Virus record (IMG/VR): IMGVR_UViG_3300013005_000001
Location: 62,001-126,000 of that record
Reading direction: 5' to 3' (one strand)
Length of the DNA stretch: 64,000 bases
Position numbers and translations under genes: made by a program. The first letter of the stretch is position 1, and the number at the start of each line of letters is the position of its first letter. A model generated the notes under the pieces. It was not told the DNA's origin and made no database searches. It saw only the letters and a list, made by a program, of their open reading frames with translations. Positions 9,518 to 54,850 of the stretch are shown piece after piece.

Positions 9518-10129
9518 CTATGTCTCTTCCTGTACATAACAATAGTAAGGGGGACCAGTGTGAGGATCAAATTTTGCAGAAACGGCAATAGCTTTAAGAC
9601 ACAGGCTTTTAGCTTGAGGGATGTTAGGAATGCCCTTTTTAGGAAACAGTATAGACATAGCCCCCAAAGCATAAGAAGCGCCTGTACCGAGCGCATAGAG
9701 GCCACTCACGTCAGATGTCCAGGAGTAATCACCATCTACAACATAGATGGAGCCATTTATTGAACAAATCACCGTAGACCCTTGCTCAGCTATATGGCTT
9801 GATTCATCTCTTTCTGGTGCAGCATAACCTTGAACTTCAAATGTAGCTCTTAGAGATGGTATGAACTTACTAGTAAAAAACTGGTCCAACTTAGAATCTG
9901 TTATGCCCGGTGGTGGTATTGGTGGTTGAAAAACATGATGCAGGATATTTATAGCCCTAACATCTCCAGCAGCACCTAAAAGATATCTACCATTAATAGC
10001 AACTTTAGAAGAATTTTTACCTAAAGTAGTTATTTGAGAAGCGAAACCGCCATCGTCCATAGAGGATATTCTAGAATCTGCACAAATGATACTGAAACCG
10101 TCACCTTGAACTCCAATTATTGTAGTCAT
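9518..10129 (-). CDS. proteasome beta-subunit/HslV-like Ntn threonine protease
   Basis: N-terminal (M)TTIIG nucleophile, ADSR, SSKV, GAAGDV, ALGTG, DPHTG. Confidence 0.85.
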   Translation of the reverse strand: MTTIIGVQGDGFSIICADSRISSMDDGGFASQITTLGKNSSKVAINGRYLLGAAGDVRAINILHHVFQPPIPPPGITDSKLDQFFTSKFIPSLRATFEVQGYAAPERDESSHIAEQGSTVICSINGSIYVVDGDYSWTSDVSGLYALGTGASYALGAMSILFPKKGIPNIPQAKSLCLKAIAVSAKFDPHTGPPYYCYVQEET

Positions 10130-11123: not shown

Positions 11124-11504
11124 TTATTTATTTTTCAATAACAACTTAACATAAAGGGTTCTTCTTTCAATATTAGAAAGAAACTTTACGGCTGTCATTC
11201 TCCAGTTGTTTTGTTTATTAACATAATCTAAAACTTCAGATTCTGAATATTGTGAATTGTTTTTTCTTAGATTGTTTTTGTGCATTTCAACTTTAGTTTT
11301 TTGGCACGATAATTGAAGTTCAATTTCTCTTCTAACCAATTGAAGGCTGTAGTGCCAAAGTTCAAGGTGAGAGTGAAGATAAGATTTAACTTCATCAGAA
11401 GTTTCAGGAGATTTAATGTCGCTGGCAACGACCTCTTGAAACTTGGACATCTCTTTGTCTGATATAGAATCTATAGTTCTATCATTCAGGTATATGAGCT
11501 CCAT
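11124..11504 (-). CDS. hypothetical helical protein
   Basis: ORF track. Confidence 0.6.
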   Translation of the reverse strand: MELIYLNDRTIDSISDKEMSKFQEVVASDIKSPETSDEVKSYLHSHLELWHYSLQLVRREIELQLSCQKTKVEMHKNNLRKNNSQYSESEVLDYVNKQNNWRMTAVKFLSNIERRTLYVKLLLKNK

Positions 11505-12240
11505 TTTTGTTGCCTTTCTTATATATAAATTGGTACACTTGTAAGATATCTTCCTTAAAGGAAGCTTGAGCAGATTCTCCAGATTTTAAAACATAATTTA
11601 GAGAATACAATGGGTAAATTGGCCAACTACCTAGCCAATTAAGTTTTTGTTTATAATCTTTCATTTTGACATCAGTGCCAAAAAGATTAGATAAAACAGT
11701 ATTTCCTATTGGACATATAATTTTAGGATTCATAATATGAATCTCATTATGAAGATATGGCAAACAGTTGTCTATATACTTTTGATCTACTTCTCTAGTA
11801 GGGCATCTTAACAGATATGTTAAACAAGCTTTATCGGAAGAAAAGCCTACTTCTTTTAAAGAAGATATAAAGAAATCAGAAGAAGCCTGATCTAAATAAG
11901 AAGTTTCAAAAATAAATAAAACGTCAGGGTTATTAACATTCCATTTTGGTAGAACTGGAGTAGAAGAGAATTGACACTTCCTACAATTGTGAGTAACCGT
12001 ATGCAGGTCTGTAATCTTTAAAGAATTTTTTAAAGAATTAGAAGAAACTCTTGCCTCTTTGATAATGTCAGCAACATCTGCATTTGGCAATTTTTTATCA
12101 ATTGCCGAGAATATATTAGAAACTATATCTGTCTCCATAAAGCCGAGTTGACCATAAGATCTTTCGACTGATGGAGATTCAGATAAAGCTTCGTTTATAA
12201 TTTCTTCTACTAAGGAAGCGTCAAATGAATTAGAACTCAT
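11482..12240 (-). CDS. family-4 uracil-DNA glycosylase-like protein with degenerate catalytic motifs
   Basis: CRKC, LRCP, CLPYL..EI...PKII.PIG; start reassigned to the ATG at 12240. Confidence 0.75.
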   Translation of the reverse strand: MSSNSFDASLVEEIINEALSESPSVERSYGQLGFMETDIVSNIFSAIDKKLPNADVADIIKEARVSSNSLKNSLKITDLHTVTHNCRKCQFSSTPVLPKWNVNNPDVLFIFETSYLDQASSDFFISSLKEVGFSSDKACLTYLLRCPTREVDQKYIDNCLPYLHNEIHIMNPKIICPIGNTVLSNLFGTDVKMKDYKQKLNWLGSWPIYPLYSLNYVLKSGESAQASFKEDILQVYQFIYKKGNKNGAHIPE

Positions 12241-12682
12241 CCGGAACAGAGTTAGCAGAACCACCCTGTTTAGCTTGACTGCTTGTAGCGGTTGCAGTGT
12301 CAGACTTCTGGAAAGAAGAACCAACATAAGTTAAAGCTTCTGCAACAATAACAATCTTTGAACGAGCTGAACCTTCTTGCTGCCAACGCTCTTGAACTAA
12401 GCGTCCAACAAGCTGAACTTGTGAACCCTTTTTCATTTTGCCTTCGCTAAGTTGTTTAGAAACAAATGAAGCATTCTTAGTTGCAAAATCTGTTCCATCT
12501 TTAAGATAGTATGTAACATCAAAGTATCCTGAGGTTACGCCTGCACCTTTTTCGCTGCCTGCAAAATCAACGGCAATTCTGAACTTAGCGATATTGCCAT
12601 TAGCAATTACTTCAGGGTCAGACACAATGCCTGCGGTTAATATTACGTTGTTACGTGGATCTATCATTTCTATTGTCTCCAA
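12230..12682 (-). CDS. ssb: single-stranded DNA-binding protein
   Basis: OB-fold pattern FRIAVD...YFDV...KGSQVQLVGRL.QERW; acidic PDEF tail. Confidence 0.85.
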   Translation of the reverse strand: METIEMIDPRNNVILTAGIVSDPEVIANGNIAKFRIAVDFAGSEKGAGVTSGYFDVTYYLKDGTDFATKNASFVSKQLSEGKMKKGSQVQLVGRLVQERWQQEGSARSKIVIVAEALTYVGSSFQKSDTATATSSQAKQGGSANSVPDEF

Positions 12683-12931
12683 TTATTCTTTGTTTAATGT
12701 ATCTTTAAATGTATTAGATATTTGATCTAAAAATCCAGTAGAAATCTTAACAGCTTCTACTGAACCATATTCTACCATAAGGTAGTTCAAAAGATTAAGA
12801 TATAAATTATATATTCCCATCTTAAGATCTGTAACCACATCAGTGGTAGTGCCTTCGGGAATATCCTCAAGGAGTTTAAACCCTTCGGCATATTCTTGTT
12901 CTTGCTGGTCTTTATTATCTTCTGTTGACAT
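12683..12931 (-). CDS. hypothetical acidic protein
   Basis: ORF track. Confidence 0.6.
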   Translation of the reverse strand: MSTEDNKDQQEQEYAEGFKLLEDIPEGTTTDVVTDLKMGIYNLYLNLLNYLMVEYGSVEAVKISTGFLDQISNTFKDTLNKE

Positions 12932-13229
12932 TAGTAGTCACCCTATTCGATAAAGCTTCGTCAATTATCTGACCAAGATATTTAGTATCTTTGTAACCTT
13001 TGTCATACAAAACAGATATAATTGGCTTTGGATCAACGTGATTATAAGTTACCAGTTGAAGATTTAAAACATCGTTTATAGTATAAATTCTATAATTATT
13101 TAAATCTCTTCTAGGATTGGGATACTTCTTGTTTTTTTCTCGGTTAGCAATAGTCAATGTGGAAACATTGAGAATTTTAGCTACTTCAGATCTATTAAAA
13201 GAAGGCTGAGATGATTTGTTTTTACTCAT
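12915..13229 (-). CDS. MerR-type helix-turn-helix DNA-binding protein
   Basis: SEVAKILNVSTLTI..RE...Y..PRRD.NNYRIYT..DV. Confidence 0.85.
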   Translation of the reverse strand: MSKNKSSQPSFNRSEVAKILNVSTLTIANREKNKKYPNPRRDLNNYRIYTINDVLNLQLVTYNHVDPKPIISVLYDKGYKDTKYLGQIIDEALSNRVTTNVNRR

Positions 13230-13284: not shown

Positions 13285-14523
13285 TCAAGACGTAACAAGA
13301 GAATTTTGAAGAATATTAGAAAACATTCTTTTGCATTGAACATAAGAATTTGGTTTTACATTTATTCTATTGGTTTTTAAAAACTTAACAGAAGCTTCTA
13401 AGGCTTTTAGTAGAGTTCGGTCTTCTAAAGAAAGACGCTTAGAAACAAAGGTTAAATAAGCTTGTGATTCGTGAATTTCATGAACATAACTACAGTTATC
13501 TGGGCAATAGTCATTGTGATCTTCGTCTTCGGTATGGTCTTCATGAATTACAATATCAAAGTTATTGCAAAAATCATTAATTAAATGTTCTCTAACATTC
13601 ATTAAATGTTGGTAATAAAAATCTGTATCAGTAAAAGGATTCCAAGTTAATGAAGAAACTTCAGAAAGAGGAATTTCTTCCCAACATTTAAAAAAGGGAA
13701 CATGCCATTGAATAGGAAGATTAGAAGGAAGGTTTTGCAAGGGATGATTTTGCAACCATGTTAAATTTGCTTTAGTTTCTGGTTTTAAATATTTTTCGAA
13801 TTGTTCATACTTGTTAGTATGCAAGAAGAAAGATATACCCTCGGTAATGTCAAAGTTAAAACCACTGTTCCAAATCCAATCGTAAGCAGAAGCCATAACT
13901 CCAGAAAGATCTTTAGGATATTTTTCAATATCTTCCATACTACTAAAGAAAGGTCTGCACAATGTGCCGTTAGAATAAAAGTTATACAATGGTGGAGAAT
14001 ATATAGTTTGATCTAATGAAGACAAAGAATTAGATGCAAAAAACATTTTAACAGAAACTAGTCTCATATCTTCTGGATTGTACATAGCAATATATACCTG
14101 CCAAGGAATAGGTAGGTAGTATTCAGATGTGCCAGTTTGAGTACTTATTTGATCTCTGTAATCGTTGTATGCTGAAACAACTTTATAAGTTGGAGGGCGT
14201 TCAAACAATATAATTCCAGGAGACAAATGTCTTACACCGGGAAATAAAAGAGATTCATCTTCATCAACAGAACGTGAAGCAGTAGCTAAATTAAGTTGTT
14301 CTATTGCATTTTCAGCAAAAGATATATTTTGAAATTCAGTATCAATAATAGGAGAAGTGGTTATTTTTTTAGAAGAAATTCCTGATTCATTAGATACTTT
14401 TAATAAGTAATCACAAACAGCATAAGAAGCGTATCGATCAGGAAAAGCTAAAATATTATAATTAAGCTCAATGTAAGAAGAAGAATAATCTTCATTAAAT
14501 ATAAAATCAGCAGGAGTTAACAT
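13285..14523 (-). CDS. prokaryotic E2 family D-like protein (paralog 3)
   Basis: LPIPWQVYI...KMFF...YSPPLYNFYSNGTLC with putative catalytic Cys. Confidence 0.7.
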   Translation of the reverse strand: MLTPADFIFNEDYSSSYIELNYNILAFPDRYASYAVCDYLLKVSNESGISSKKITTSPIIDTEFQNISFAENAIEQLNLATASRSVDEDESLLFPGVRHLSPGIILFERPPTYKVVSAYNDYRDQISTQTGTSEYYLPIPWQVYIAMYNPEDMRLVSVKMFFASNSLSSLDQTIYSPPLYNFYSNGTLCRPFFSSMEDIEKYPKDLSGVMASAYDWIWNSGFNFDITEGISFFLHTNKYEQFEKYLKPETKANLTWLQNHPLQNLPSNLPIQWHVPFFKCWEEIPLSEVSSLTWNPFTDTDFYYQHLMNVREHLINDFCNNFDIVIHEDHTEDEDHNDYCPDNCSYVHEIHESQAYLTFVSKRLSLEDRTLLKALEASVKFLKTNRINVKPNSYVQCKRMFSNILQNSLVTS

Positions 14524-14526
14524 AAT

Positions 14527-15708
14527 TTAAACAATCTCCGATTGTTGGATATAGGAAGCAACTTCATCATGTTGAAATTCACTAAAGAAATCTTTATTAG
14601 GATCTTCATAATTAAGAAGTACAGACTTATATATAGAAGAAATAATATATGGATTAGAAATATAATTAGCAATAGAAGAAGGTTGATAATTTTTAACTAC
14701 TACTCTATAATTTGTTTCTAAAGAACAAGAAGGATAATGAGAATACACTGCAGATAAAACTTTTGCTATTTTAGCCCAAGGAGTTACTGCATTTGAATAA
14801 GTTTGAGGTATTAAGGAAGAAGAAGAAGAATTAGAATTAGACTTTTTTAAATGGTGTTTTAAAGTTGGATAATGAGAAGTGTTTTGTTTAGTATAAGTAA
14901 TATAACCAATATGTTCTTCTAAAGAAGTATTGGACAAAAGAAACAATAAGCTTTTAAAATACTTTGCTGTGTTGTATCTATAGCCCATATTAGCAAGAAT
15001 AGCAGCATTTTTTTTAGAAGAAGCAGATATTCTATCAATTATAGGAGCAAAGTATTCTTGATTAAACATATGAGGAGATAAATCACAATTCCATCCACCA
15101 AAATAAGAATTAAAAATATGATTATAAACGTCGGTAATAGAAGAACCGTTTTGAATAAGTTGAGTAGCTATAAGAGAATCTTGACCCATGCAAATATTTC
15201 CACCACTAGAATTTGGAAGGTAGCAAGGAACCAACACATCATCAAGAGACTGAAGAGGCTTATCATTAAAATATAAATGAAAACCAAAAGTGCTGCTAAA
15301 TGAATGAGATTGATAATTGGTAGATATAACAGAAACTGTCCATGGAATCCAAATTTTCACAGATTGTAAAAACTTAGGAGAAATTCTAGGACGATAAGAA
15401 GTTGAGGTAGAAAAGTCTACTTCTATTTCAAATGGAGGACGTTCTATGACGTGCATTTTTCCATCTGGAGATGAGTACCTAACAGCTAGGGGAAGCAAGG
15501 AATAATCTGTAGTAGAAGTAGTTTCATAATGTTGATTTATAAGTTTGTAAGTATCTAAAAAGTTAACGTGATAGTTAATCCAAAGATCGTTTTCAACTAC
15601 TCTAGGAGTTGCTTGGTGAGTAAGATTAAAAATATTTTCAGGGATATATAATGAATAATTATAGTCGTAAAAATCAATAGAGTTCATGGCATTATTCCTT
15701 AGAAACAA
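14527..15708 (-). CDS. prokaryotic E2 family D-like protein (paralog 2)
   Basis: IWIPWTV...LYF...LVPCYLPNSSGGNICMG. Confidence 0.7.
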   Translation of the reverse strand: MFLRNNAMNSIDFYDYNYSLYIPENIFNLTHQATPRVVENDLWINYHVNFLDTYKLINQHYETTSTTDYSLLPLAVRYSSPDGKMHVIERPPFEIEVDFSTSTSYRPRISPKFLQSVKIWIPWTVSVISTNYQSHSFSSTFGFHLYFNDKPLQSLDDVLVPCYLPNSSGGNICMGQDSLIATQLIQNGSSITDVYNHIFNSYFGGWNCDLSPHMFNQEYFAPIIDRISASSKKNAAILANMGYRYNTAKYFKSLLFLLSNTSLEEHIGYITYTKQNTSHYPTLKHHLKKSNSNSSSSSLIPQTYSNAVTPWAKIAKVLSAVYSHYPSCSLETNYRVVVKNYQPSSIANYISNPYIISSIYKSVLLNYEDPNKDFFSEFQHDEVASYIQQSEIV

Positions 15709-16303: not shown

Positions 16304-16938
16304 GTCATTTGAGAAACTTGATAATTCTCTGTTTTAAGTCTTTGAATTTCTTCAAGAAGAGAATTTATATATATATCTTTTTCAGATAAAAGATTTGAAA
16401 GGTACTGATTATCAAGTTTAGTTAGATTAAAAGAATCAATAAAAGAAGATATAGAAGAATGAAAAGAATCAGAATTATTAAAAGAATGAACAACAAAAGG
16501 TTGGTCTAATTTATGTGTATTCAAAAGAACAACAGAGCCAGATCCTTGGCCAACTATTTTGATATAGTTGTTAGCAGTTAACTCTGCAATTATAGTGTTG
16601 TAATCACTAGGCAGAAATGAGTTAAAAGCTAATGTTTTAAATAATTTCTTTGATCCAATGAAAGCATAAGAGATATGCTGAGTGTTAAAAAGATCATTAG
16701 CAAAAGCGCGTGCAATAACTGTTTGACTTAGTGTCAATTCAGAAGTTAATTGAGCATACCGTTCTACGCTTATTTCAGAACTTTTAGGCAAAGTCTTAAG
16801 ATAAGAATAATTCTTGTTAAGAAGATGATAAGCAATAAAAGTATTTACTGGATACAAATAATCATCAATAGAATCAAGAATATCATCTAGATGTTCATTA
16901 GCAAATCCAGTAGAAGGCATTTGGTATATAGGTAACAT
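16294..16938 (-). CDS. hypothetical protein with C-terminal coiled coil
   Basis: LLSEKDIYINSLLEEIQRLKTEN heptads. Confidence 0.6.
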   Translation of the reverse strand: MLPIYQMPSTGFANEHLDDILDSIDDYLYPVNTFIAYHLLNKNYSYLKTLPKSSEISVERYAQLTSELTLSQTVIARAFANDLFNTQHISYAFIGSKKLFKTLAFNSFLPSDYNTIIAELTANNYIKIVGQGSGSVVLLNTHKLDQPFVVHSFNNSDSFHSSISSFIDSFNLTKLDNQYLSNLLSEKDIYINSLLEEIQRLKTENYQVSQMTWR

Positions 16939-17216
16939 TAAGTCTCCGTAAGTATAGATTCAAAAGATAAGGTATTATTTTGTAATGAATCAAGAAGTGG
17001 CAAAGATGACAAATGCAACGAATGTATTTCGTCATGCACTTGTTTTGCAATTGGATATATTTTGTGTAAAAAATAAAAATTGTTTAATATATTAAAGTTT
17101 TCAGATTCTACAAATAAAACAGAAACGTTATTGATCGGTTCCGTCAGATAACTTTTCGTCAGCCAGGCTCTCAATGGCTGAGGCAACTCCTGGACTTTCT
17201 GCAGCCAATAGACCAC
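16938..17216 (-). CDS. hypothetical protein, start uncertain
   Basis: Fills the gap in the operon; no clear RBS. Confidence 0.3.
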   Translation of the reverse strand: MVYWLQKVQELPQPLRAWLTKSYLTEPINNVSVLFVESENFNILNNFYFLHKIYPIAKQVHDEIHSLHLSSLPLLDSLQNNTLSFESILTET

Positions 17217-17517
17217 CGGCTCCTTCTTTCATGGCTTCAAGCATTTGTTTTCTGCTTTGAGCTATAGTGTCCATAAATATTTTTTGAGATTCAGGAGAAG
17301 CAAATTTAATTTGGGCTATAAGGCCTTCCATATTAACTGCTTGCTCACCAAAACCAAGAATTAAAGTAGCAATCTGCTTTTCTAAGTTCTCGATAGACTC
17401 ATCAAATTCTTTAAATCTTTCATCTATTTTAGCAGACATAGATATAATAAGTTGCTGAGTTTGTTCTCTAAGCAAATCTATATCGTTTATTCCTTCAAAT
17501 AATGAATCATCTGACAT
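17128..17517 (-). CDS. hypothetical coiled-coil protein
   Basis: ORF track, translational coupling. Confidence 0.65.
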   Translation of the reverse strand: MSDDSLFEGINDIDLLREQTQQLIISMSAKIDERFKEFDESIENLEKQIATLILGFGEQAVNMEGLIAQIKFASPESQKIFMDTIAQSRKQMLEAMKEGAGGLLAAESPGVASAIESLADEKLSDGTDQ

Positions 17518-18134
17518 TACGCATCATACCATTCTGTGTTGTTGGTAACGTGAGAAACCAAAGAAAGATCTAGTAAATAAGAAATACTTACAACATCTTG
17601 ACGAGTTACTTTAATAGAGTCAACAGATAAAGGTGATTTCATATCAGGTATGAATGCACCACTGTCAGACTTGCGAGCTTTAAAATGACCGGCTTTCCAG
17701 ATGAATGCAGAAGTATCTACATTGTCACCTGATTGCCAATACTGGCATTTAAAGATTCTACTAATTGATTGACCAGCAGCAGTCATTGTTCCACCGTAAG
17801 AAACATATGCTTCAGGTGTAGCAAGGCCAAGTCGCTCATTGGCAGGAAAGTTAAGAGCAGCAGTTCCATTAGTTATTGCTTTAAGATAGGCTGCAAAGTC
17901 AATGGCATCAACAAAACAATTAGTGTTACTTTCAAGTTTTCCAGAAGCATTGGTCTTGCCAATGTCAATGGAGAATTTCATACCTTGAAACCAAGGTCGA
18001 ATAGAAACAAAACCACTTTGAGATTTAGATTTAAACCACTTTTTATAAAGTGTGTTAGTGTATTTTGGTTTATCATCTTGGTTATCAGAATCTAGTGATT
18101 CTAAAAACTCTTCTACATTTTCTTCAATTGACAT
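17517..18134 (-). CDS. hypothetical beta-rich protein directly downstream of the AAA ATPase
   Basis: GAGG RBS, 205 aa. Confidence 0.7.
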   Translation of the reverse strand: MSIEENVEEFLESLDSDNQDDKPKYTNTLYKKWFKSKSQSGFVSIRPWFQGMKFSIDIGKTNASGKLESNTNCFVDAIDFAAYLKAITNGTAALNFPANERLGLATPEAYVSYGGTMTAAGQSISRIFKCQYWQSGDNVDTSAFIWKAGHFKARKSDSGAFIPDMKSPLSVDSIKVTRQDVVSISYLLDLSLVSHVTNNTEWYDA

Positions 18135-18156
18135 AATTACCTCTTGTTTAAGATTG

Positions 18157-19755
18157 TTAAACTTTCAAGTCCCATGAAGGGGCTTGAGAAGATTTTTGTT
18201 TACCAAGTATATCATCTATATCATTGTACTGGAAGCTAGAAGCCCAGTCCCAGTTTTCATAAGCATAGCGATATAAGTCTTTAATCATTTCGCGTTCTTT
18301 ATTCCAAAGAATATTGCGCATAAATGGAGCAGCTTTTACTACGTCAGCAGTATTTAGCATGCGGTGTTCAGCAGAAACAACATTAAATTTTGTTTCTTTA
18401 ACAAGTGATTTAATTTCTGCACCAGTAAAATACTTAGTTGCATGAGCTATAGCAGAATAATCATACGTATCTTCAGGAAGATAAATCTTAATAATTTCAA
18501 TTCGTTCTTCAAATGATGGCAAGCCAACAAAGAAGATCTTATCGAATCGTTCTGCACGAAGCATTTCTGGCTTAAGATGATTAAGCTGGTTAGCAGCACA
18601 CATTAAGAATACGTCATTAGGAAGTTCTTGAAGACCAGTAAGAAATTCGCCATGAACACGATCGGTAGTGCCACCGTCTACTTGAGATGAGCTTTGACCA
18701 CCAGACATGTCTCGACCGAACTCGTCAATCCAAACACAAAGAGGAGCCATGACTTTAATCTGTTGAAAGACTGTACGCATGTTTTGTTCTGATTGACCAA
18801 TGAAGGAATTCATTACTTGACTTACACCAGTTCGAGCAAGATCAAGACCAAGTGCACTAGCAGTTGCTTCACAAATAGCAGATTTACCAGTGCCCGGAAT
18901 ACCAACAGTTAGCATGCGACGAATAGGCTGAATGCCAAACTTCTGAGCTTCTTGAGGATTATTCCAAAAATAAAGATTGCGCATAATAACATCTTTAATA
19001 TTATCAAGGCCACCAATTTGATCAAAAGTAATCTTAGGTTTGATTATTTCAAGAATTCCATTTTTCTTAACATTAGCCATTTTAGCTTCGTAAATATAAG
19101 AAGAGCTAATTGTCCCATGCTCAAGAACTGACATAAGACAGAGGTTGATGAACTTAGATTCTGTAAGGCCAAGTCCAGCATTAGAAATTTCTTTAGCCTT
19201 AGCAGCATCTAACACTTCGCCATTAGTTGAAGTGTGTATGTGATTAAGAATTTCGTTTAGTTCTTGAAGAGTAGGGTACATATCTTCATGAACATAAAAT
19301 AGATGAGCAATTTCCTCTGGAACATCAGATGCGCTCAACACTATTAGCTGAAGTGGCATCAGAGAAATGTCATCAGATTTAAAAGATTTTCTGTAGTCAG
19401 AATGAAGAGAAGAAACTAAACCTGAGAATTCGTTAGCAAATGCTTTGGGGTCTCCAATTAAATTGTAAATAAAAGACTTAGGAAGATCTTTAACATCAGG
19501 AGAATTAAACATGTAATCAAATGATAATGAAAGATCTGTAGTTGTTTTCACCATGGGTGGAGCGCCTTCTTCAGGCGCAGGTATAGAAACAAGAACTGGT
19601 TTCCACTGAAAGTTTACGTTTTGAGAAAATCCATCTTTTGAAATCGTAAAATAAGTACGCTTATCAAAAGATATAATGTTTTCTTCAAGTCTGTAGGGGT
19701 CGGTTGTTTTAATCCATATGGCAGGAATGCCAAGTTGAATTTGCTGAAAGAGCAT
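18157..19755 (-). CDS. AAA+ ATPase (Ycf46/Cdc48-like, with degenerate N-terminal AAA module)
   Basis: Walker A GIPGTGKS, Walker B CVWIDE, sensor-1 AAN, Arg finger LRAERFD; GGAG RBS before ATG 19755. Confidence 0.9.
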   Translation of the reverse strand: MLFQQIQLGIPAIWIKTTDPYRLEENIISFDKRTYFTISKDGFSQNVNFQWKPVLVSIPAPEEGAPPMVKTTTDLSLSFDYMFNSPDVKDLPKSFIYNLIGDPKAFANEFSGLVSSLHSDYRKSFKSDDISLMPLQLIVLSASDVPEEIAHLFYVHEDMYPTLQELNEILNHIHTSTNGEVLDAAKAKEISNAGLGLTESKFINLCLMSVLEHGTISSSYIYEAKMANVKKNGILEIIKPKITFDQIGGLDNIKDVIMRNLYFWNNPQEAQKFGIQPIRRMLTVGIPGTGKSAICEATASALGLDLARTGVSQVMNSFIGQSEQNMRTVFQQIKVMAPLCVWIDEFGRDMSGGQSSSQVDGGTTDRVHGEFLTGLQELPNDVFLMCAANQLNHLKPEMLRAERFDKIFFVGLPSFEERIEIIKIYLPEDTYDYSAIAHATKYFTGAEIKSLVKETKFNVVSAEHRMLNTADVVKAAPFMRNILWNKEREMIKDLYRYAYENWDWASSFQYNDIDDILGKQKSSQAPSWDLKV

Positions 19756-19795
19756 GTGTACTCCGAATATCAAAATAATAATCTAAGGGCTTTAT

Positions 19796-19865
19796 AAAAA
19801 ATGATGGGGGGGACCACTCTATTAAGAGTTTAATAAACTATCAAGTAGTTTAATAGCCCCCCCCA
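19796..19865 (-). terminator. branched G7/C8-closed hairpin plus U tract between the Ubl and AAA genes
   Basis: G run 19806-19812 pairs with C run 19857-19864, two internal hairpins, followed by a T5 tract on the minus strand. Confidence 0.55.
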
Positions 19866-19885
19866 CGATCATAGTAGGAAAGGTA

Positions 19886-20137
19886 TTAGCCCTTTTCGCC
19901 TGCACGGCGATGGAACTCAACGTTGTCGTTTGGCTGAATGACATAGTTCTCGTCGAGCTTGTCTTTACCCTTGTAAGCAATAGCGTCTGAGCTAATGCCC
20001 CAGAGCTTGCTGAACTGCTCACGAACTTGTCCAACAGTCTTTCCTGAGACTGGTGCTGGCTGATTGTATACACCGTAACGAACGTTGGCTACGCCTTCGC
20101 TTGAGCTGGTGCTTGTTTGGTTGGAATTCATTTCCAT
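19886..20137 (-). CDS. ubiquitin-like (beta-grasp) modifier protein
   Basis: 83 aa, GKTVGQVR...AY.G...DENYVIQPND.VEF, C-terminal RRAGEKG, adjacent to E1. Confidence 0.85.
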   Translation of the reverse strand: MEMNSNQTSTSSSEGVANVRYGVYNQPAPVSGKTVGQVREQFSKLWGISSDAIAYKGKDKLDENYVIQPNDNVEFHRRAGEKG

Positions 20138-20158
20138 GTTATTATCTCCGTTTATTAG

Positions 20159-20908
20159 TTATAGGTAAGCGGGTTGCTGTTGATTAACCATACGATTGTA
20201 TGGCTGGGACATGCCAAGACCTAAATCAAAGTAGATCTCTGACTGTTCTGGATTTTGTTCGGAAACAATAGTATATTGAATACGACCAAGAATCATTGCA
20301 GCAACAGCCATGTTGGTGGCAAGTATTTGTGTACCACCTTCTACTTCGGCTCGTTCTTGACAAGACATTTCACCTGGATTGCGATCAGGTGGATTTTGGT
20401 ATTCTGGGTGTGTTTCTACCGGATGAGCAGTAACGTCTACGCCATCGCGACGACGATAATGATAGATGCTACCAAAAAGGTTATCATCATTTCCACCAGT
20501 AAAAACATCTACGTTGTTAAGCTTTGAAGCTGCGTCAAATAAAATTTTACGAGCAGCAAAGTTGTCAACAACAGCAAGAACAATATCGCCTTCAGTAATT
20601 AACTGAGTAGCTCTGATCTTGCTAGATTCTTCATCTGTTTCAGGATGTTCATCTGAAACAACCCACTTAGGAATAGGTATAACAAGAGTCTGATTAAACT
20701 GCTTAGTTAGCTCAAGAGCTTTAACTGAAGCCTTGTTTCCTACTTGAGTAAATGATTGACGCTCTAAGTTTCTTTGCTCATAACTGTCACCATCAACAAT
20801 TATTAAAGCAGATCCAGGATATTTCCATTCAAGAAGTCTTACGACTCCTTCTGCTAACCAGGTGCCAATGCCACCGGCACCAACTAGAACTACTCTTTTG
20901 GGGTCCAT
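20159..20908 (-). CDS. ThiF/E1-like Ubl-activating enzyme
   Basis: VGAGGIG, VDGD..E.RNL.RQ, VDNFAAR, PGEMSC putative catalytic Cys. Confidence 0.9.
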   Translation of the reverse strand: MDPKRVVLVGAGGIGTWLAEGVVRLLEWKYPGSALIIVDGDSYEQRNLERQSFTQVGNKASVKALELTKQFNQTLVIPIPKWVVSDEHPETDEESSKIRATQLITEGDIVLAVVDNFAARKILFDAASKLNNVDVFTGGNDDNLFGSIYHYRRRDGVDVTAHPVETHPEYQNPPDRNPGEMSCQERAEVEGGTQILATNMAVAAMILGRIQYTIVSEQNPEQSEIYFDLGLGMSQPYNRMVNQQQPAYL

Positions 20909-20918
20909 AAATTATTCC

Positions 20919-22571
20919 TTAATCGTAATAAGCCAAGCTATTAGTATGCTCATAAGCAACATAATCTTGACATTGAGTAATAGGGTTTTCAATTTTTCTT
21001 TTACTTATAGCAAAATCAAGAATTGAAGTTAAATAAGGTTTGCAATTGCGAGAATAATAAAATTCACAATCAACGCAACTTGACTGATTATCATACACGT
21101 TGTATGGATGAGTGTGATCAAATTCAATTACATCATCATAATATACAGTCTTCTCACAGGTGCATTGTTCAATTAAAGATAAAGGAATGTCACAGCAAAC
21201 TGTTCTAGTCTGATCAAATCCTTCATAGAAATAATCATCAAGAACTTCTACAGTTGTTCCTTCGTTACTAGAAAGTAATGAAGTATGCAAAGAACTGTCA
21301 TCATCGTTATAATCAACTTCTTTAATTCGCATAAGCAAATCTTGATCTTTGCCATCTTTAGTCCAAAGGTAATAAGTTACATTAGGATCTAAATTTCTGT
21401 CAGTTAAATACTTTTTAGCGTTATCGATTATCTCAGCATAAGAATCTGATATAAGAGCAAAGCACAAATCGCAAGTGTCACAATAGAAATTCTTTGCGTA
21501 ATAAGCAAGTACTTCAGTTTGACATGATGGGCATTCAGATCCAGCAGAATCTACTTCACCTATAACGAGATATGGTTCATCGTCTTTTGGATCTGGATAC
21601 TCTTGAAGTCGAGGATCTCCGTTACGAATACCAGGATGAGTAGAGGCCTGCGGAAGACTCTGTGCCTGCGTTGTAGCCTGCGTTGTAGACGCCTGCGCCA
21701 CCCGAGTAACCGAACCCCCCGCTATAGGGGGGAGTGCTTTTTTTACTTTAGAAGTCCATTCTACTACTTGAGGATCGGGTTCTTTAAGAAAAATATAATC
21801 TTCAAATACATCTTCTGGCTTAAGGGTATAAGTATGACCGGCCATTTGCATTTCAATATGATATTGAGTTGCGCCATTATTGACAGATTTTTGCCATCCA
21901 TAAGTAATATGGATACCATCAAAATCAGCTTGGTCTGCATGATCTGTGCCAGATGCATATGCAGCCATATCGGGATGGCTATGAACAGAACCAACAATTA
22001 AAACATCTTCTGGTTTTTGATCTACGATACTGTCCGCATCGTACTTACAGTGAACAGAAGTGTTTACTTGGTCTGGAACAAGAACGCCCCAGCCTTGAGA
22101 AGTGCCTTCATACTGAGGATCAAATGTCAAAAGAACAATTGACTCAGTGCCGTGCTGAGCATGAACCAATCTAAAGAACTCGTCTAGCTTGTCAATAATA
22201 ACACGAGGAATGGCAGGAAGACTGTATTCAGCTGTTTCACGAGTAACGTCAAAGTCAAAGAGGTCTTCGTCAACTATTTCAGAAACAGTTCTTCCAACAA
22301 AGTTGTTAACAACCTTAACAATCTTAGTAGAAAGATCAGTTACGTAAGAAACATTCTTAGTTGTAATGCCCTTATCGTAAACGTTTGTTTCAACTTTGCG
22401 GTCAGTAGCAACATTGCAAATTAGATAATAAATATTGAAACCAAGAAATTCAATTTCTTCTTCAATGTTATCTCTGTTTGCCATAAAGCATGGGACTCCG
22501 GATTTAGTCCAGAAGTAATTTAAGTCTTCTAACTTAACATCCATATAAGTAATATTATCTATTTGGTCCAT
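20919..22571 (-). CDS. JAB/MPN+ (JAMM) isopeptidase with C-terminal Cys-rich zinc-binding regions
   Basis: TESIVLL...GSVHSHPDMAAYASGTD (E-HxH-x7-S-x2-D); CPSC/CDTC and further Cys clusters. Confidence 0.88.
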   Translation of the reverse strand: MDQIDNITYMDVKLEDLNYFWTKSGVPCFMANRDNIEEEIEFLGFNIYYLICNVATDRKVETNVYDKGITTKNVSYVTDLSTKIVKVVNNFVGRTVSEIVDEDLFDFDVTRETAEYSLPAIPRVIIDKLDEFFRLVHAQHGTESIVLLTFDPQYEGTSQGWGVLVPDQVNTSVHCKYDADSIVDQKPEDVLIVGSVHSHPDMAAYASGTDHADQADFDGIHITYGWQKSVNNGATQYHIEMQMAGHTYTLKPEDVFEDYIFLKEPDPQVVEWTSKVKKALPPIAGGSVTRVAQASTTQATTQAQSLPQASTHPGIRNGDPRLQEYPDPKDDEPYLVIGEVDSAGSECPSCQTEVLAYYAKNFYCDTCDLCFALISDSYAEIIDNAKKYLTDRNLDPNVTYYLWTKDGKDQDLLMRIKEVDYNDDDSSLHTSLLSSNEGTTVEVLDDYFYEGFDQTRTVCCDIPLSLIEQCTCEKTVYYDDVIEFDHTHPYNVYDNQSSCVDCEFYYSRNCKPYLTSILDFAISKRKIENPITQCQDYVAYEHTNSLAYYD

Positions 22572-22603
22572 AAAATCTCCAGATTTAGGGTTTCTTTATT
22601 TTG

Positions 22604-24472
22604 TTAAAAAGGGTCAGTGAAAGATTGATTGTTAGCTTGTAAAAAGTTTTGATGTTTTTTAATTCCAACAGATTTGGATAAAGTGTGTACAGATTGCTGA
22701 ATAGCAACTTGAACATACTGTTCTTGGAATGGCTGATAATAAGCTACCATTTCTCCTTCAGGAGATTCTGTAACATTACCAAGGCATTCTGCACAACACT
22801 GAGTTACAGTAAGAGAAGTGTCTTCAGGTAAAATAGTGGGAGTACAAGGTCCAAATTGAGAATTATTATTCTTCAACAATCCGCAAGGGCAAGTAAAATG
22901 CTGAGCATTGCATGATTGACAAAGGGTAATAACTTTAGGAGCTAAGATTAAATCAGGTGAAACAACCATGGCCTTAGACTGAGGATAACTTTCTTGCCAA
23001 CCATTAGTTTCAATAGCAACAGCTGCACATACATAACAGTTAGTAGGAGTTAATTCATTATCTGCTATATAACCAGGTTGGCAGTTAGAACATACCACTT
23101 CTTCAGATTCAGGAATGTGTAGAAGTTGTTTAGCTAAAGCAGTTTTTGCATTTTCAGAATTTCCTATAACGCCTATCCAACTTGAGCAAATATGGCATTC
23201 TGCTACAGTATCATGTTGGGTATGATAGTATTCACAGTCTGATTCAGAAAAAACTATATTAGGATCTTCGTTATTATAGTATTTATCAACAGACTCAATA
23301 AAAGAGTAATGATCATTTATGCATGAGTTGCATACATCATTGCCGTAAGCATCGCAAATTGGTTCTTCATCGCTCATATGATGAATGTCTTCACAGCATG
23401 AGCAAACCCAATCGTTTTCATTATCTTCGTCTTGAGAAAATAAGTTTGGCTGGATTAAAACTGCAGAACCGTTTTTCTCTCTGTTAGCAACAGTAAAATC
23501 ATAAGGGTTATCTTTAGCAGTATGAGTATAATTTACTGGAGAAGAAGCAAAAGCTTTTTTAAACATATCAGCAATGTTTAGATCGGTAAAAGATAAATCA
23601 GGACGAGATACAATATTATACATCTTAGGAATGTTAGTATCAGAATAGTATGCTTGGTAGTTACCTAACATAGCCATAGCAAGAGTTAGCTCTTGTCCGT
23701 TGTAATCATGTTGAGCTTGATTATCCATGTCTTTAACTTTAACAGGGATCCAAAGGTTTTCATCTAGAGTCCAATTAAAACCTTCTTCATCAGACTTTTG
23801 CTGCCAAAGCTTTGGATTTGTAATATATTCAGGCTTTCCGTTAGCAGCATAAAAACGAGGACCATCAGTCTCTGACATGTTGGCATCATTATAAGTCTCT
23901 ACTCCTGAGCAGCGCTCAATGAAACGAGAAACTTTTTCATTAAAAGGAAAAGAAGACCAATCATCTTTATGATACAAGCAAATCCAACCTACGGCATTGC
24001 CTCGATAGCCTTTGCAGTTAATGTTAGGAAGGTTAACGTGATAAAGAACGTTATTAGGAGAAGTGATTGGATATGGAGAATAAAACATTTTAGCACCTAG
24101 AAGGTTGCCGTTTTCAAAGTCTCCAATAACAATGCGATAGGGCTGAGCTACATAGTAAGTTTTAGCGTGTATATCGCCCTCGTGAGAGCCCCAGTTGAGG
24201 TGATACATGCCGGGGGCGTGTTGGGTCACAACTTGGGTATGAGGACCCGCAGAACGGATTGCAAGCACTCCTGTGCCATTCAAGGGAAGTAAGCCTGTAT
24301 CAAAGGATGCAAACTGAGAAAAGTTACTGTAAAAAGATACGATATCTTTATCAGTTACATGGTCTAAGTTAAAAGATTTAACAGAAGACCGGACGGCATA
24401 AGTGCCTTGATCGTTTTTAACGAGAGAGTAGTTATATGAGTCAGTCATTGTATTTTCCATTCGCAATGTCAT
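22604..24472 (-). CDS. prokaryotic E2 family D-like protein (paralog 1) with C-terminal CxxC repeats
   Basis: YVAQPYRIVIG...KMFYSPYP...LYHVNLPNIN...GWICL; roughly ten CxxC-type pairs after residue 350. Confidence 0.75.
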   Translation of the reverse strand: MTLRMENTMTDSYNYSLVKNDQGTYAVRSSVKSFNLDHVTDKDIVSFYSNFSQFASFDTGLLPLNGTGVLAIRSAGPHTQVVTQHAPGMYHLNWGSHEGDIHAKTYYVAQPYRIVIGDFENGNLLGAKMFYSPYPITSPNNVLYHVNLPNINCKGYRGNAVGWICLYHKDDWSSFPFNEKVSRFIERCSGVETYNDANMSETDGPRFYAANGKPEYITNPKLWQQKSDEEGFNWTLDENLWIPVKVKDMDNQAQHDYNGQELTLAMAMLGNYQAYYSDTNIPKMYNIVSRPDLSFTDLNIADMFKKAFASSPVNYTHTAKDNPYDFTVANREKNGSAVLIQPNLFSQDEDNENDWVCSCCEDIHHMSDEEPICDAYGNDVCNSCINDHYSFIESVDKYYNNEDPNIVFSESDCEYYHTQHDTVAECHICSSWIGVIGNSENAKTALAKQLLHIPESEEVVCSNCQPGYIADNELTPTNCYVCAAVAIETNGWQESYPQSKAMVVSPDLILAPKVITLCQSCNAQHFTCPCGLLKNNNSQFGPCTPTILPEDTSLTVTQCCAECLGNVTESPEGEMVAYYQPFQEQYVQVAIQQSVHTLSKSVGIKKHQNFLQANNQSFTDPF

Positions 24473-33795: not shown

Positions 33796-33869
33796 GATTT
33801 TTCCGTTTCATATAATATATATAAATAGATAATAATTAATAAATATTTTTTTTTTGTATTTACTAAATA

Positions 33870-48426: not shown

Positions 48427-48522
48427 GGATATCTCCTATGTGTTATAATTGTGATTAATTGTGAATAATTTTGAAAAAAGGTATATCTGAGGTATACCCT
48501 TCTTTTTGCTTATACCGCAGTG

Positions 48523-48765
48523 TTAGGCTGTGGCTGTATCTGAGTCAGAAGTATCTTCAACTTCAGCAGGACGAACCTCGCGATAACCTTCTGCAATTGC
48601 ACCGGTGATGCTACGTGTGAGATCACTGGTTTTAGAAGGTGTTACTTTGATTGCGTCTACCGTTTTACCGGTAATGCTGCTAGTTGCAGAGATAGTTTTT
48701 GCGGTTAATTTACCGAAAAGCTTAGCTGTTTTTTCTGCCATGGGTGTTTTTTCTGTTGTGAACAT
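48523..48765 (-). CDS. hypothetical protein
   Basis: AAGGA RBS. Confidence 0.6.
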   Translation of the reverse strand: MFTTEKTPMAEKTAKLFGKLTAKTISATSSITGKTVDAIKVTPSKTSDLTRSITGAIAEGYREVRPAEVEDTSDSDTATA

Positions 48766-49067
48766 GATTTTCCTTTTGTGTTTGTGATTATTGGGTGTCT
48801 GTGTTTGTTCCTGGAATTATGAATTCTAGGATGTCTGTGATGAAATCGAGTAACCAATCAAGCATTTGTTTTCTCCTTTCCCTTCTTTTTTGTGGTTGCT
48901 GTCTGAGGAAGCATTTTAGAAGCTAGAAAGAAAAAACAAATACAACGGTCAATCACGCCACCTTTGAGGTGTGTAATTGCCGTTGTTATTGCTCTTTTGA
49001 TTAACGATTATATAAATGGTTGCTAAGAATGCGTAATTGCATACAAAGCCAAGCATAAACATTGCCA

Positions 49068-49370
49068 TTATACTAAGTCCAACTCTACAAGTTGAGTATT
49101 TTTCTGGTACCATTCTACTAAAGTAGCAGATTGTCCGCGAAGACGACTGCTGTGTTCGTAGTTATAGCCGGCGTACTCCTTGAAGTACTCGGTTCCGTCC
49201 ATAAGTTGAATGCTTGTTTTATTGTTGAGCGTATGATCAATAATCATAAGCACTGGACAACCTACAAACATTCTGATATATGCTTGTCCACCATTATAAT
49301 GGTAGAGTCTGTCTTCTTTGGCAGCGATATCTATCATTTCTAACGATTGGATGTATGTAACTTTTTCCAT
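49068..49370 (-). CDS. hypothetical protein
   Basis: AAGGAG RBS before MEKVTY. Confidence 0.6.
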   Translation of the reverse strand: MEKVTYIQSLEMIDIAAKEDRLYHYNGGQAYIRMFVGCPVLMIIDHTLNNKTSIQLMDGTEYFKEYAGYNYEHSSRLRGQSATLVEWYQKNTQLVELDLV

Positions 49371-54812: not shown

Positions 54813-54850
54813 TTCTGTCTCCTTTTTGTTGTTGTTGTTTTTCATGTTAA

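What the first reader, a model, noticed from the sequence alone, without database searches (positions are those of the whole stretch)
18157..20137. AAA+ ATPase placed directly downstream of the Ubl gene: candidate Ubl-selective unfoldase
Seen: a Ycf46/Cdc48-like ATPase with intact Walker A/B, sensor-1 and Arg finger, plus a long degenerate N-terminal module, is the gene right after Ubl. Known: p97/Cdc48 and Mpa/ARC link protein tags to unfolding. Inference: the N-module may be the Ubl receptor.
Basis: partly seen in the sequence, partly recalled or inferred. Interest (0 to 1): 0.75.

Follow-up and report, generated by a model that had tools for sequence, protein, structure and literature searches.

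The report
Phage Ycf46-type unfoldase beside Ubl cassette
A 210-kb lake phage carries a protein-unfolding ATPase next to a complete ubiquitin-like tagging kit and near a proteasome-type protease, but only gene position links them so far, and its N-terminal part is a generic dead ATPase module, not a tag receptor.

Summary
18157-19755(-) encodes a 532-aa classical-clade AAA+ ATPase with intact Walker A/B, pore loop, sensor-1 and Arg fingers. The rest of the flagged span is a 130-nt spacer and the 83-aa Ubl gene (19886-20137).

The N-terminal 226 residues model confidently as an AAA-like fold without a P-loop. The whole model matches plastid Ycf46 best, so "Ycf46-like with a degenerate N-module" is right.

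- For: in every relative with enough flank (AAA identity 98% to 32%) the order E2-like, JAB, E1, Ubl, AAA, Whirly-fold protein, then E2-like genes (two here) is kept. This subclade also has a proteasome/HslV-type peptidase 8 kb downstream.
- Against: a hairpin follows the Ubl stop in 47 of 47 distinct relatives, with a T-run in 26, so the AAA probably starts its own unit. Up to 2.3 kb of other genes can sit between Ubl and AAA. The strict partner of the AAA is the Whirly-fold gene. E2-JAB-E1-Ubl cassettes occur in other viruses with no AAA within 9 kb. About 36 more distant AAA homologues, four of them in complete genomes, lack any E1 or Ubl.
- The N-module is a family-wide feature, not a Ubl-specific receptor.

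Coupling of the AAA to the Ubl pathway is plausible (about 0.4) and untested.

The parts
18157..19755 (-). AAA+ ATPase gene, 532 aa, Ycf46-type
   Evidence: Pfam AAA E 1e-22 plus AAA_lid_3. PHROG 8638 E 7e-67. Best PDB sequence hits are Cdc48/VAT/p97 D2, E 5e-53. Foldseek against AFDB Swiss-Prot: the top 5 hits are Ycf46 over full length, E 5e-21 to 1e-16.
19078..19755 (-). N-module, residues 1-226: degenerate AAA-like domain (alpha/beta plus helical lid) with no P-loop
   Evidence: pLDDT about 88. VIA-align aligns residues 1..226 to the AAA modules of Vps4, spastin, p97 D1, NSF D2 and ATAD1, Z 9 to 9.6 over 175-190 aa. No sequence-level match.
18328..19077 (-). Active AAA module plus lid, residues 227-476. 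Walker A at 18880-18903, pore loop 1 F-I-G at 18796-18804, Walker B at 18721-18726, Arg fingers at 18547-18558.
   Evidence: Invariant columns in alignments A1 and A2. Coordinates derived from the ATG at 19755.
18160..18327 (-). C-terminal extension, residues 477-532. It ends in a variable linker and a tail with a conserved aromatic residue (here SWDLKV).
   Evidence: The tail pattern does not track presence or absence of the peptidase.
19796..19866 (-). Terminator-like element between Ubl and AAA: G8/C7-closed branched hairpin followed by a T6 run
   Evidence: RNA fold -37 kcal/mol, z -3.3. A GC hairpin follows the Ubl stop in 47 of 47 distinct relatives, 26 with a T-run. After E1, AAA or p205 the T-run count is 0-1, and after JAB it is 6.
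19886..20137 (-). Ubl gene, 83 aa, ThiS/MoaD-like, C-terminus GEKG
   Evidence: No Pfam hit. Atlas feature hits to ThiS-family clusters. Invariant terminal G-x-K-G in 21 homologues.
20159..20908 (-). E1-like adenylyltransferase, 249 aa
   Evidence: Pfam ThiF E 1.5e-13. Best NCBIfam match is PRTRC_ThiF over full length. Invariant GAGGxG and C183.
20919..22571 (-). JAB/JAMM peptidase, 550 aa, with a Cys-rich C-terminal half
   Evidence: Pfam Prok-JAB E 2.7e-6. The HSHPx7SGTD motif is visible in the translation.
22604..24472 (-). p622: E2-like N-terminal domain plus Cys-rich C-terminal half
   Evidence: hhalign against the p412/p393 family: probability 95.7%, E 1e-8. Invariant LPNxxC.
17517..18134 (-). 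p205: Whirly-fold protein, always the gene directly after the AAA
   Evidence: Model pLDDT 87.7. VIA Z 12.7 (StWhy2), 12.4 (PBF-2) and 11.1 (MRP1/2), well above the next hits. Foldseek hits PurA, Whirly and MRP. Adjacent to the AAA gene in all clade loci.
16938..17517 (-). p129 and p92: two small conserved genes, overlapping and packed behind p205. No family found.
13285..15708 (-). Two tandem E2-like genes: p393 (14527-15708) and p412 (13285-14523)
   Evidence: 10 of 26 family members hit Pfam Prok-E2_D, best E 9e-9. Consensus PLPNxYxxGxxC.
9518..10129 (-). Proteasome-beta/HslV/BPH-like Ntn peptidase, 203 aa, starting MTTIIG
   Evidence: All 13 family members hit Pfam Proteasome, best E 4e-9. 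PDB hits to BPH and HslV. Invariant T2, D18, K42, GAAGD and GxG.

Best explanation
Shown:
- The gene encodes a Ycf46-type AAA+ protein: a catalytically dead AAA-like N-terminal module stacked on one active classical-clade AAA module with an aromatic pore loop.
- The gene follows a conserved terminator-like hairpin that closes the E2-like/JAB/E1/Ubl cassette.
- It is packed tightly against a Whirly-fold gene and two small genes.
- The same gene string runs on to two more E2-like genes and, in this subclade, a proteasome-type peptidase.

Inferred from the fold and motifs:
- It is very probably a hexameric motor that threads and unfolds proteins.
- From the terminator-like hairpin upstream and the tight packing downstream, it heads its own transcription unit.

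Inferred from context (about 0.4):
- The motor is the ATP-driven arm of this extended Ubl locus. It would pull Ubl-marked proteins out of complexes or unfold them, possibly for the peptidase.
- The tag or substrate would be recognised through a partner such as the Whirly-fold protein or through ring surfaces, not through a dedicated Ubl-receptor N-domain.
For: Identity and mechanics:
- Motifs and family assignment.
- Tandem-AAA and Ycf46 architecture.

Context:
- The block p166, E2-like, JAB, E1, Ubl, AAA, Whirly, p129, then one to three E2-like genes is kept in about 60 IMG/VR contigs and four MAG contigs, with AAA identity from 98% down to 32%.
- Ubl-pathway genes lie on both sides of the AAA block.
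- A T1 peptidase with an intact Thr1/Asp/Lys set lies 8 kb downstream. It is in this genome and in 13 of 19 related records, at a downstream position in the loci that reach it.
- The genome has no ClpP.
- One independent virus (L136) has a PRTRC-like ThiF and ParB just upstream of a 32%-identical AAA.
- The region is present in four lake metatranscriptome libraries. One contig bridges Ubl and AAA.
Against: - A terminator-like hairpin follows Ubl in 47 of 47 relatives.
- One to three genes (0.9 to 2.3 kb) are inserted between Ubl and AAA in divergent members.
- The modules are separable. Nine loci carry E2-JAB-E1-Ubl with no AAA within 9 kb.
- About 36 distant AAA loci have no Ubl system, and four complete genomes have no E1.
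- The peptidase is missing from two clade genomes that are 92% complete and from the divergent subclade. Its nearest deposited relative sits in a phage where the flanking 28 kb show neither a Ubl cassette nor a Ycf46-size AAA.
- SSB and UDG keep the same synteny, so collinearity alone cannot separate function from inheritance.
- No Ubl-binding domain was recognised.
- DNA carry-over in the RNA libraries is not excluded.
Confidence: 0.4

Rival explanations
1. Independent remodeller. The AAA works with its co-transcribed Whirly-fold partner, a single-strand nucleic-acid binder by fold, in the phage's early DNA-metabolism region. It would load, recycle or strip DNA-bound protein complexes. Its place next to the Ubl cassette would be inherited gene order only.
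For: - AAA and p205 are adjacent (gap about 10-25 nt) in all clade loci, down to 32% identity.
- p205 has the Whirly fold.
- SSB and UDG lie downstream.
- Distant family members sit beside ParB, RecA, RNase H/DnaB and Ku genes and lack Ubl genes.
- A terminator-like hairpin follows Ubl.
Against: - Classical-clade AAA proteins with Ar-Phi-Gly pore loops act on proteins, and no Whirly partnership is known.
- E2-like genes lie at the far end of the same gene string.
- A shared fold does not show that p205 binds nucleic acid.
Confidence: 0.35
2. Cap for the phage's proteasome-type peptidase. The AAA would dock on the HslV/BPH-like ring and feed it unfolded proteins, forming an ATP-dependent protease with or without the Ubl tag.
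For: - The T1 peptidase has intact catalytic residues and lies on the same strand, 8 kb downstream.
- No ClpP is encoded in the genome.
- The AAA belongs to the same clade as the proteasomal ATPases.
- The AAA has a C-terminal tail with a conserved aromatic residue.
Against: - The peptidase is absent from clade genomes that keep the AAA.
- The tail is neither HbYX nor GQYL, and it does not track the presence of the peptidase.
- The two genes are 13 genes apart.
- Fuchs et al. (PMC8665760) found no AAA+ partner for any group I proteasome homologue except HslV.
- In phage DSL-LC01 the peptidase homologue has no annotated Ycf46-size AAA in the 28 kb around it.
Confidence: 0.15
3. One reading: the N-terminal module is the Ubl receptor that makes the motor Ubl-selective.
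For: Only position. The N-module is the one part of the protein without an assigned activity, and the gene follows Ubl.
Against: - The N-module is an AAA-like fold shared over its full length with Ycf46, and from about residue 135 onward with phage homologues that have no Ubl system.
- In type II AAA proteins, degenerate rings usually serve assembly.
- No known ubiquitin-binding fold was found.
Confidence: 0.08

Closest known systems
Ycf46 (plastid and cyanobacterial AAA protein; COG0464 'SpoVK/Ycf46/Vps4')
   Same: Same two-module build over the full length. Five Swiss-Prot Ycf46 models are the top Foldseek hits (query 2-500 against 7-484, E 5e-21 to 1e-16, 23-25% identity). Similar length, about 500 aa.
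   Different: This one is phage-encoded. Only 23-25% identical in that structural alignment; sequence-level relatedness to Ycf46 was not tested. Its gene context differs. From my own knowledge, the function of Ycf46 is itself poorly defined, so the match gives architecture and not a role.
Uncharacterised phage 'AAA-ATPase' family, PHROG 8638 (Mycobacterium phage Corndog gp96, Rhodobacter phage RcTiptonus gp60, Agrobacterium phage JP1_048)
   Same: Homologous from about residue 122-137 to the end, 26-32% identity. Also found in early or DNA-metabolism regions.
   Different: Those phages have no E1, Ubl, JAB, E2-like or Whirly-type p205 homologues nearby. The first 130 or so residues do not align.
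Cdc48/p97/VAT with Ufd1-Npl4 or UBX cofactors
   Same: Best solved sequence relatives, through the D2 domain (E 5e-53). Tandem-AAA arrangement. Works like: a threading segregase that can act on ubiquitin-marked proteins.
   Different: No double-psi-barrel N domain. The first ring lacks a P-loop. No Npl4 or UBX cofactor was found. The weak zf-NPL4 hit of p141 is spurious: the protein has too few cysteines and histidines for such a zinc site.
Mpa/ARC-Pup and PAN-SAMP systems
   Same: Same idea: a small protein tag plus a classical AAA unfoldase plus a T1 peptidase.
   Different: No coiled-coil/OB N-domain. No HbYX or GQYL tail. The pup_AAA score is low (E 1.5e-13 against 1e-31 for PAN). The peptidase is HslV/BPH-like and has no alpha ring.
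PRTRC cassette (ParB-related, ThiF-related) of plasmids and ICEs, with the Prok-E2/JAB/E1/Ubl operons of Iyer, Burroughs and Aravind (PMC1779556)
   Same: The best NCBIfam match for the E1 is PRTRC_ThiF. The JAB weakly hits PRTRC_A. The E2-like genes hit Prok-E2_D.
   Different: No ParB is encoded in this genome. All scores fall below the curated cut-offs. To my knowledge an AAA gene is not part of the described PRTRC cassette.
Phage proteasome homologues PPH, AAH and CPH (Fuchs et al. 2021, PMC8665760)
   Same: The 203-aa peptidase is a compact group-I-like T1 peptidase in a phage.
   Different: That survey found no co-occurring AAA+ partner. Here a classical AAA and a Ubl system lie within 15 kb.

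Membership tests
Classical-clade AAA (PF00004) | Walker A and B, sensor-1, SRH Arg fingers, Ar-Phi-Gly pore loop | tested here: met
   Pfam E 1e-22. Invariant G285-S292, D344-E345, N389, R400, R403 and F318-I-G320.
Ycf46-type AAA proteins | About 500 aa, with an N-terminal non-catalytic module followed by a single C-terminal AAA plus lid | tested here: met
   Full-length Foldseek alignment to five Ycf46 models, E 5e-21 to 1e-16, about seven orders of magnitude better than Cdc48, Pex6 or AFG2.
Ycf46-type AAA proteins | Orthology to plastid and cyanobacterial Ycf46 at the sequence level | not tested
   No Ycf46 HMM appeared among the Pfam or NCBIfam matches. Identity in the structural alignment is only 23-25%.
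Cdc48/p97/VAT | N-terminal double-psi barrel domain and a nucleotide-binding D1 | tested here: not met
   The protein starts directly with the AAA-like module. There is no P-loop in residues 1-226. TIGR01243 scores 106 bits against a cut-off of 803.
Proteasomal ATPases that read a tag (Mpa/ARC, PAN) | Coiled-coil plus OB N-domain, and a C-terminal HbYX or GQYL docking motif | tested here: not met
   The N-module is alpha/beta. The C-terminus is ...SWDLKV. Scores are far below the cut-offs.
Ubl-linked unfoldase (functional class) | Conserved linkage to a Ubl system across independent lineages | tested here: inconclusive
   Linked throughout one wide phage clade. Unlinked in about 36 distant loci and four complete genomes. 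One possible independent case, L136.
Ubl-linked unfoldase (functional class) | Direct binding of the Ubl, or processing of Ubl conjugates | not testable with these tools
   No multimer prediction or experiment was available.
PRTRC system (for the neighbouring cassette) | A ParB-family gene together with ThiF and PRTRC proteins A to F | tested here: not met
   No ParB_N anywhere in the 210-kb genome. ThiF and JAB hits are below the cut-offs.
IetAS anti-phage system | IetA ATPase adjacent to an IetS protease | tested here: not met
   IetA models match only the generic AAA domain, E 3e-26, no better than PAN. The nearest subtilase is 12 kb away.
T1 (proteasome/HslV) peptidases (for ORF 9518-10129) | N-terminal Thr nucleophile after Met, Asp17 and Lys33 equivalents, GxxxD and GSG motifs | tested here: met
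   MTT start, D18, K42, GAAGD and GTG are invariant. All 13 members hit PF00227. BPH and HslV are the best PDB matches. No structure model was made.

The most novel reading that the evidence does not exclude
A group of about 200-kb lake phages encodes a minimal ubiquitin-proteasome-like pathway of its own, inside 15 kb on one strand. The parts are a Ubl, an E1, three E2-like proteins, a JAMM isopeptidase, a Ycf46-type classical AAA unfoldase with a Whirly-fold adaptor, and a BPH/HslV-like peptidase. The AAA would couple Ubl-marked host or phage proteins to extraction or degradation. If so, this would give Ycf46-type ATPases their first defined role, and give a group I proteasome homologue other than HslV its first AAA partner.
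Probability: 0.2. Interest if true: 0.9.

Novelty: new variant of a known kind. Interest (0 to 1): 0.68.

Why it matters
Bacterial Ubl-conjugation systems (Bil, CBASS Cap2/3) are known as host defences. Here a phage carries a full E1/E2/JAB/Ubl set. My searches of the held papers found no description of such a phage set, nor of one placed next to a classical AAA unfoldase and a proteasome-type peptidase.

The published survey of proteasome homologues found no AAA+ partner for any of the new homologue families it described, the phage ones among them (PMC8665760). Ycf46-type ATPases still lack a clear function.

If the parts work together, this locus would be a compact, expressible model of tag-dependent unfolding and degradation. 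It would also show how a phage might rewrite the host proteome. If they do not, the result still corrects the reading of the N-module and defines a conserved AAA plus Whirly-fold gene pair.

Tried and rejected
1. Nucleotide search of the phage collection with the locus found nothing. p205 has no protein match there either.

2. The genes after the AAA in JP1, RcTiptonus and Corndog (about 230-266 aa) are not detectably related to p205 or to each other.

3. Profile-profile comparison of the N-module with the active AAA module found no similarity. A PDB profile search with the N-module found only noise. The AAA-like nature of the N-module therefore rests on the predicted fold alone.

4. The AF2 model of the active AAA half came out poor (pLDDT 30-60). 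No structural claim is made about it.

5. The weak zf-NPL4 hit of p141 is rejected, because the protein has too few cysteines and histidines for such a zinc site.

6. The C-terminal tail of the AAA was tested as a docking motif that might co-vary with the peptidase. No clear correlation was found.

7. The motif TTTATAAAGCC after the terminator is not a repeated promoter element: it occurs once in the window.

8. PADLOC gave only generic hits, IetA for the AAA and CBASS E1-E2 for the E1.

9. Metatranscriptome contigs are too shallow (word depth 2-6) to show termination or read-through.

It was rerun without them.

11. A profile of the E2-like family found no solved structure. The atlas search for p129 gave no usable lead.
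Full report
**What is at the coordinates.** The window is bases 62001-126000 of a 210,302-bp IMG/VR virus record with direct terminal repeats, rated 100% complete. Near-identical DNA is found in lake-water metagenomes. The flagged span 18157-20137 on the minus strand holds two genes.
- The candidate Ubl gene is 19886-20137, 83 aa, ending RRAGEKG.
- The AAA gene is 18157-19755, 532 aa.
- A 130-nt spacer lies between them.

I take the AAA start as the ATG at 19755. It has GGAG 8 nt upstream, and all homologues begin ML(F/Y)QQ(I/M)QLG.

**The ATPase.** Pfam AAA matches residues 281-411 (E 1e-22) and AAA_lid_3 matches 432-471. The best solved sequence relatives are the D2 domains of Cdc48, VAT and p97 (E about 5e-53, query 228-476). 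NCBIfam gives PAN, CDC48 and FtsH at about 1e-30, all far below their family cut-offs.

In alignments of 24 to 27 homologues the following positions are invariant:
- Walker A, G285-IPGTGKS
- Walker B, D344-E345
- pore loop 1, F318-I-G320
- sensor-1, N389
- Arg fingers, R400 and R403
- the lid motif T444-G-A-E

This is the full equipment of a substrate-threading classical AAA motor. That it forms a hexameric unfoldase is inferred from what is known of this clade. It was not shown here.

**The N-module.** Residues 1-226 match no Pfam, NCBIfam or PDB sequence, alone or as a profile. They show no profile similarity to the active module.

The AlphaFold model has high confidence there (pLDDT about 88) and low confidence in the active half. 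VIA-align places residues 1..226 on the AAA modules of Vps4, spastin, i-AAA, p97 D1, NSF D2 and ATAD1 (Z 9 to 9.6, 175-190 residues). It places the whole model on tandem-AAA proteins such as Pex1/6, 55LCC, p97, VAT and Rix7. Foldseek against the PDB aligns the full length to Cdc48 D1-D2.

Against Swiss-Prot AlphaFold models, the five best hits are all plastid Ycf46. They align from residue 2 to about 500 at 23-25% identity, E 5e-21 to 1e-16. Cdc48, Pex6 and AFG2 follow at about 1e-13.

The N-module is a P-loop-less AAA-like domain shared by the whole Ycf46 type. It is not a specialised add-on. The Z scores are only moderately above background, and the AAA-like reading rests on a predicted fold.

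**The neighbours upstream.** On the same strand, in order:
- p622 (22604-24472).
- A 550-aa JAB/JAMM protein (Prok-JAB E 2.7e-6; HSHPx7SGTD motif).
- A 249-aa E1 (ThiF E 1.5e-13). Its best NCBIfam match is the PRTRC-system ThiF, over its full length.
- The Ubl.

The Ubl has no Pfam match. Its language-model features point to ThiS-family clusters. Its C-terminus G-(E/K/R)-K-G is invariant in 21 homologues, two of which carry two extra residues after the final Gly.

The N-terminal domain of p622 is homologous to the E2-like family described below (hhalign probability 95.7%, E 1e-8).

**The neighbours downstream.** The AAA gene is followed, after 22 nt, by p205. Next come p129 and p92, which overlap, then p214 and p203.

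After these lie two tandem genes, p393 and p412. Ten of 26 members of their family hit Pfam Prok-E2_D (best E 9e-9), and their consensus PLPNxYxxGxxC resembles the E2 active-site signature.

Further on are a MerR-like gene, an SSB and a UDG-family gene. At 9518-10129 there is a 203-aa protein that starts MTTIIGVQGDG. All 13 members of its family hit Pfam Proteasome (best E 4e-9). A family profile finds BPH and HslV in the PDB. T2, D18, K42, GAAGD and GxG are invariant. The genome has no ClpP.

p205 models at pLDDT 87.7 as a repeated beta4-alpha unit. Its structural matches are StWhy2 (Z 12.7), PBF-2 (12.4) and MRP1/2 (11.1), well above everything else. That is the Whirly/PUR fold of single-strand nucleic-acid binders.

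**The junction between Ubl and AAA.** The spacer folds into a G8/C7-closed branched hairpin followed by a T6 run (-37 kcal/mol, z -3.3). In 47 of 47 distinct relatives, a GC-rich hairpin of different sequence follows the Ubl stop. In 26 of them a T-run follows the hairpin. The same test after E1, AAA or p205 gives 0-1 cases with a T-run, and after JAB it gives 6.

I read this as an intrinsic terminator or attenuator. The Ubl would close one transcription unit and the AAA would open the next.

Lake metatranscriptome contigs cover the region thinly, and the Ubl is covered best. One contig bridges Ubl and AAA, and two contigs end at or just past the hairpin. Depth is too low, and DNA carry-over too possible, to decide.

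**Comparative genomics.**
- In about 60 IMG/VR contigs and four MAG contigs, the order p166, E2-like, JAB, E1, Ubl, AAA, p205, p129, then one to three E2-like genes, SSB, UDG is kept. AAA identity falls from 98% to 32% across them.
- The gap between Ubl and AAA is usually under 200 nt. It reaches 0.9 to 2.3 kb, with inserted genes, in divergent members. AAA and p205 are always adjacent.
- Nine loci of another viral group carry a large E2-like gene, then JAB, E1 and Ubl. There the Ubl is fused to an N-terminal extension whose sequence resembles a Rho_N/HeH helix-hairpin motif (not scanned). They have no AAA or p205 within 9 kb, nor anywhere in three of those contigs (36-63 kb, 12-20% complete).
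- Thirty distant AAA loci (28-36% identity), three cultured phages and three MAG loci assigned to bacteria have no Ubl, JAB or E2-like gene. Four complete genomes among them have no E1 at all.
- The one exception is L136. A PRTRC-like ThiF lies 3.2 kb upstream of the AAA, a ParB gene lies directly before it, and a RecA-like gene follows it.
- The peptidase is found in 13 of 19 clade records besides this genome, at a downstream position in the loci that reach it. It is missing from two records that are 92% complete, from the divergent subclade, and from all distant AAA phages.
- The peptidase's closest deposited relative (46% identity) is in lake Actinomycetia phage DSL-LC01. The annotation of the 28 kb around it shows neither a Ubl cassette nor a Ycf46-size AAA.

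**Interpretation.** Three things are well supported.
- The protein is a Ycf46-type threading ATPase.
- Its constant partner is a Whirly-fold protein.
- It lies inside a long, deeply conserved gene string with Ubl-pathway genes on both sides and, here, a proteasome-type peptidase.

Ubl selectivity is not shown. The two modules are separable in evolution. A terminator-like element lies between them. The wider family is unlinked to Ubl systems. The synteny also extends to SSB and UDG, so it may be plain inheritance.

My estimates:
- Functional coupling of the AAA to the Ubl pathway: about 0.4.
- An independent role with the Whirly-fold partner in early DNA-related functions: about 0.35. The two readings are not exclusive, because a segregase could strip Ubl-marked proteins from DNA.
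- A direct partnership with the peptidase: about 0.15.

**Comparison and novelty.** The closest known kinds are:
- Ycf46, for architecture.
- The uncharacterised phage AAA-ATPases of PHROG 8638, by homology.
- Cdc48/p97, for the motor domain and as the functional analogy.

It is not a member of the Cdc48, PAN or Mpa families. It has no N-terminal barrel or coiled-coil/OB domain, no HbYX or GQYL tail, and scores far below their cut-offs.

The neighbouring cassette resembles PRTRC and the Prok-E2/JAB/E1/Ubl operons (PMC1779556), but the genome has no ParB.

The survey of proteasome homologues reports phage homologues and no co-occurring AAA+ partner (PMC8665760). A review of jumbo-phage genomics has no hit for 'JAB' or 'ThiF', and its two mentions of ubiquitin do not concern a phage Ubl system (PMC7824862). 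Searches for PRTRC and for phage Ubl systems found no functional study. These searches cover only the held library.

I rate the gene as a new member of a known family. I rate the locus as a new variant of a known kind.

Noticed in passing
window 9518-10129 (-): A 203-aa proteasome-beta/HslV/BPH-like Ntn peptidase (MTTIIG... start, intact Thr/Asp/Lys) lies 8 kb downstream of the AAA on the same strand. It is conserved in 13 of 19 related records.
   Followed up: yes
window 13285-15708 (-) and 22604-24472 (-): Three paralogous E2-like genes (Prok-E2_D type, PLPNxYxxGxxC). Two are in tandem downstream of the AAA block. The third, p622, is fused to a Cys-rich half and lies upstream of JAB.
   Followed up: partly
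window 17517-18134 (-): p205 is a confident Whirly/PUR-fold protein and always the gene directly after the AAA. I know of no described AAA plus Whirly pairing.
   Followed up: yes
window 19796-19866 (-): A terminator-like G8/C7 branched hairpin with a T-run follows the Ubl stop. A hairpin of different sequence sits at the same place in 47 of 47 relatives. It is followed here by TTTATAAAGCC, a motif also seen in several relatives.
   Followed up: yes
L069-L077 (for example L069:9723-10196): A second viral group has a large E2-like gene, then JAB, E1 and a 155-aa Ubl. This Ubl carries an N-terminal extension whose sequence resembles a Rho_N/HeH helix-hairpin motif (not scanned against Pfam). A weak second E1-like gene follows. 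No AAA lies within 9 kb.
   Followed up: partly
L136:4724-11096: In a 155-kb virus, a PRTRC-like ThiF, a ParB-family gene, a 32%-identical Ycf46-type AAA and a RecA-like gene lie in a row. This may be an independent ThiF-AAA association.
   Followed up: partly
L181:7838-10732: In one divergent lineage the AAA ORF is about 965 aa. A long, different N-terminal region stands in place of the usual N-module. Compare P0142 and P0147, at 967-977 aa.
   Followed up: no
IMGVR_UViG_3300042868_009074 (L094 and L096; L165 and L176): This 267,766-bp record holds two different copies of the whole block: AAA at 61% and 59% identity, peptidase at 67% and 64%. It is possibly a chimeric assembly of two related phages.
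   Followed up: no
window 11482-13229 (-): UDG-family (281 aa), SSB (150 aa) and MerR-like (104 aa) genes lie between the E2-like pair and the peptidase. The region mixes DNA-metabolism and protein-modification genes.
   Followed up: partly
window 32269-35543 (-) and 54851-56794 (-): A subtilase S8 peptidase (508 aa), a ResIII/SNF2-type helicase (557 aa) and a PcfJ-like protein (647 aa) are also encoded in the window.
   Followed up: no
window 48000-64000: G+C rises from about 0.30-0.39 to 0.42-0.47 in the last quarter of the window, and the GC skew changes sign.
   Followed up: no
window 17100-22600: Four lake-water metatranscriptome runs hold 38-46% of the sampled words of this stretch, in contigs 99-100% identical to it. 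This suggests the phage was active in sampled lakes, although DNA carry-over is not excluded.
   Followed up: partly
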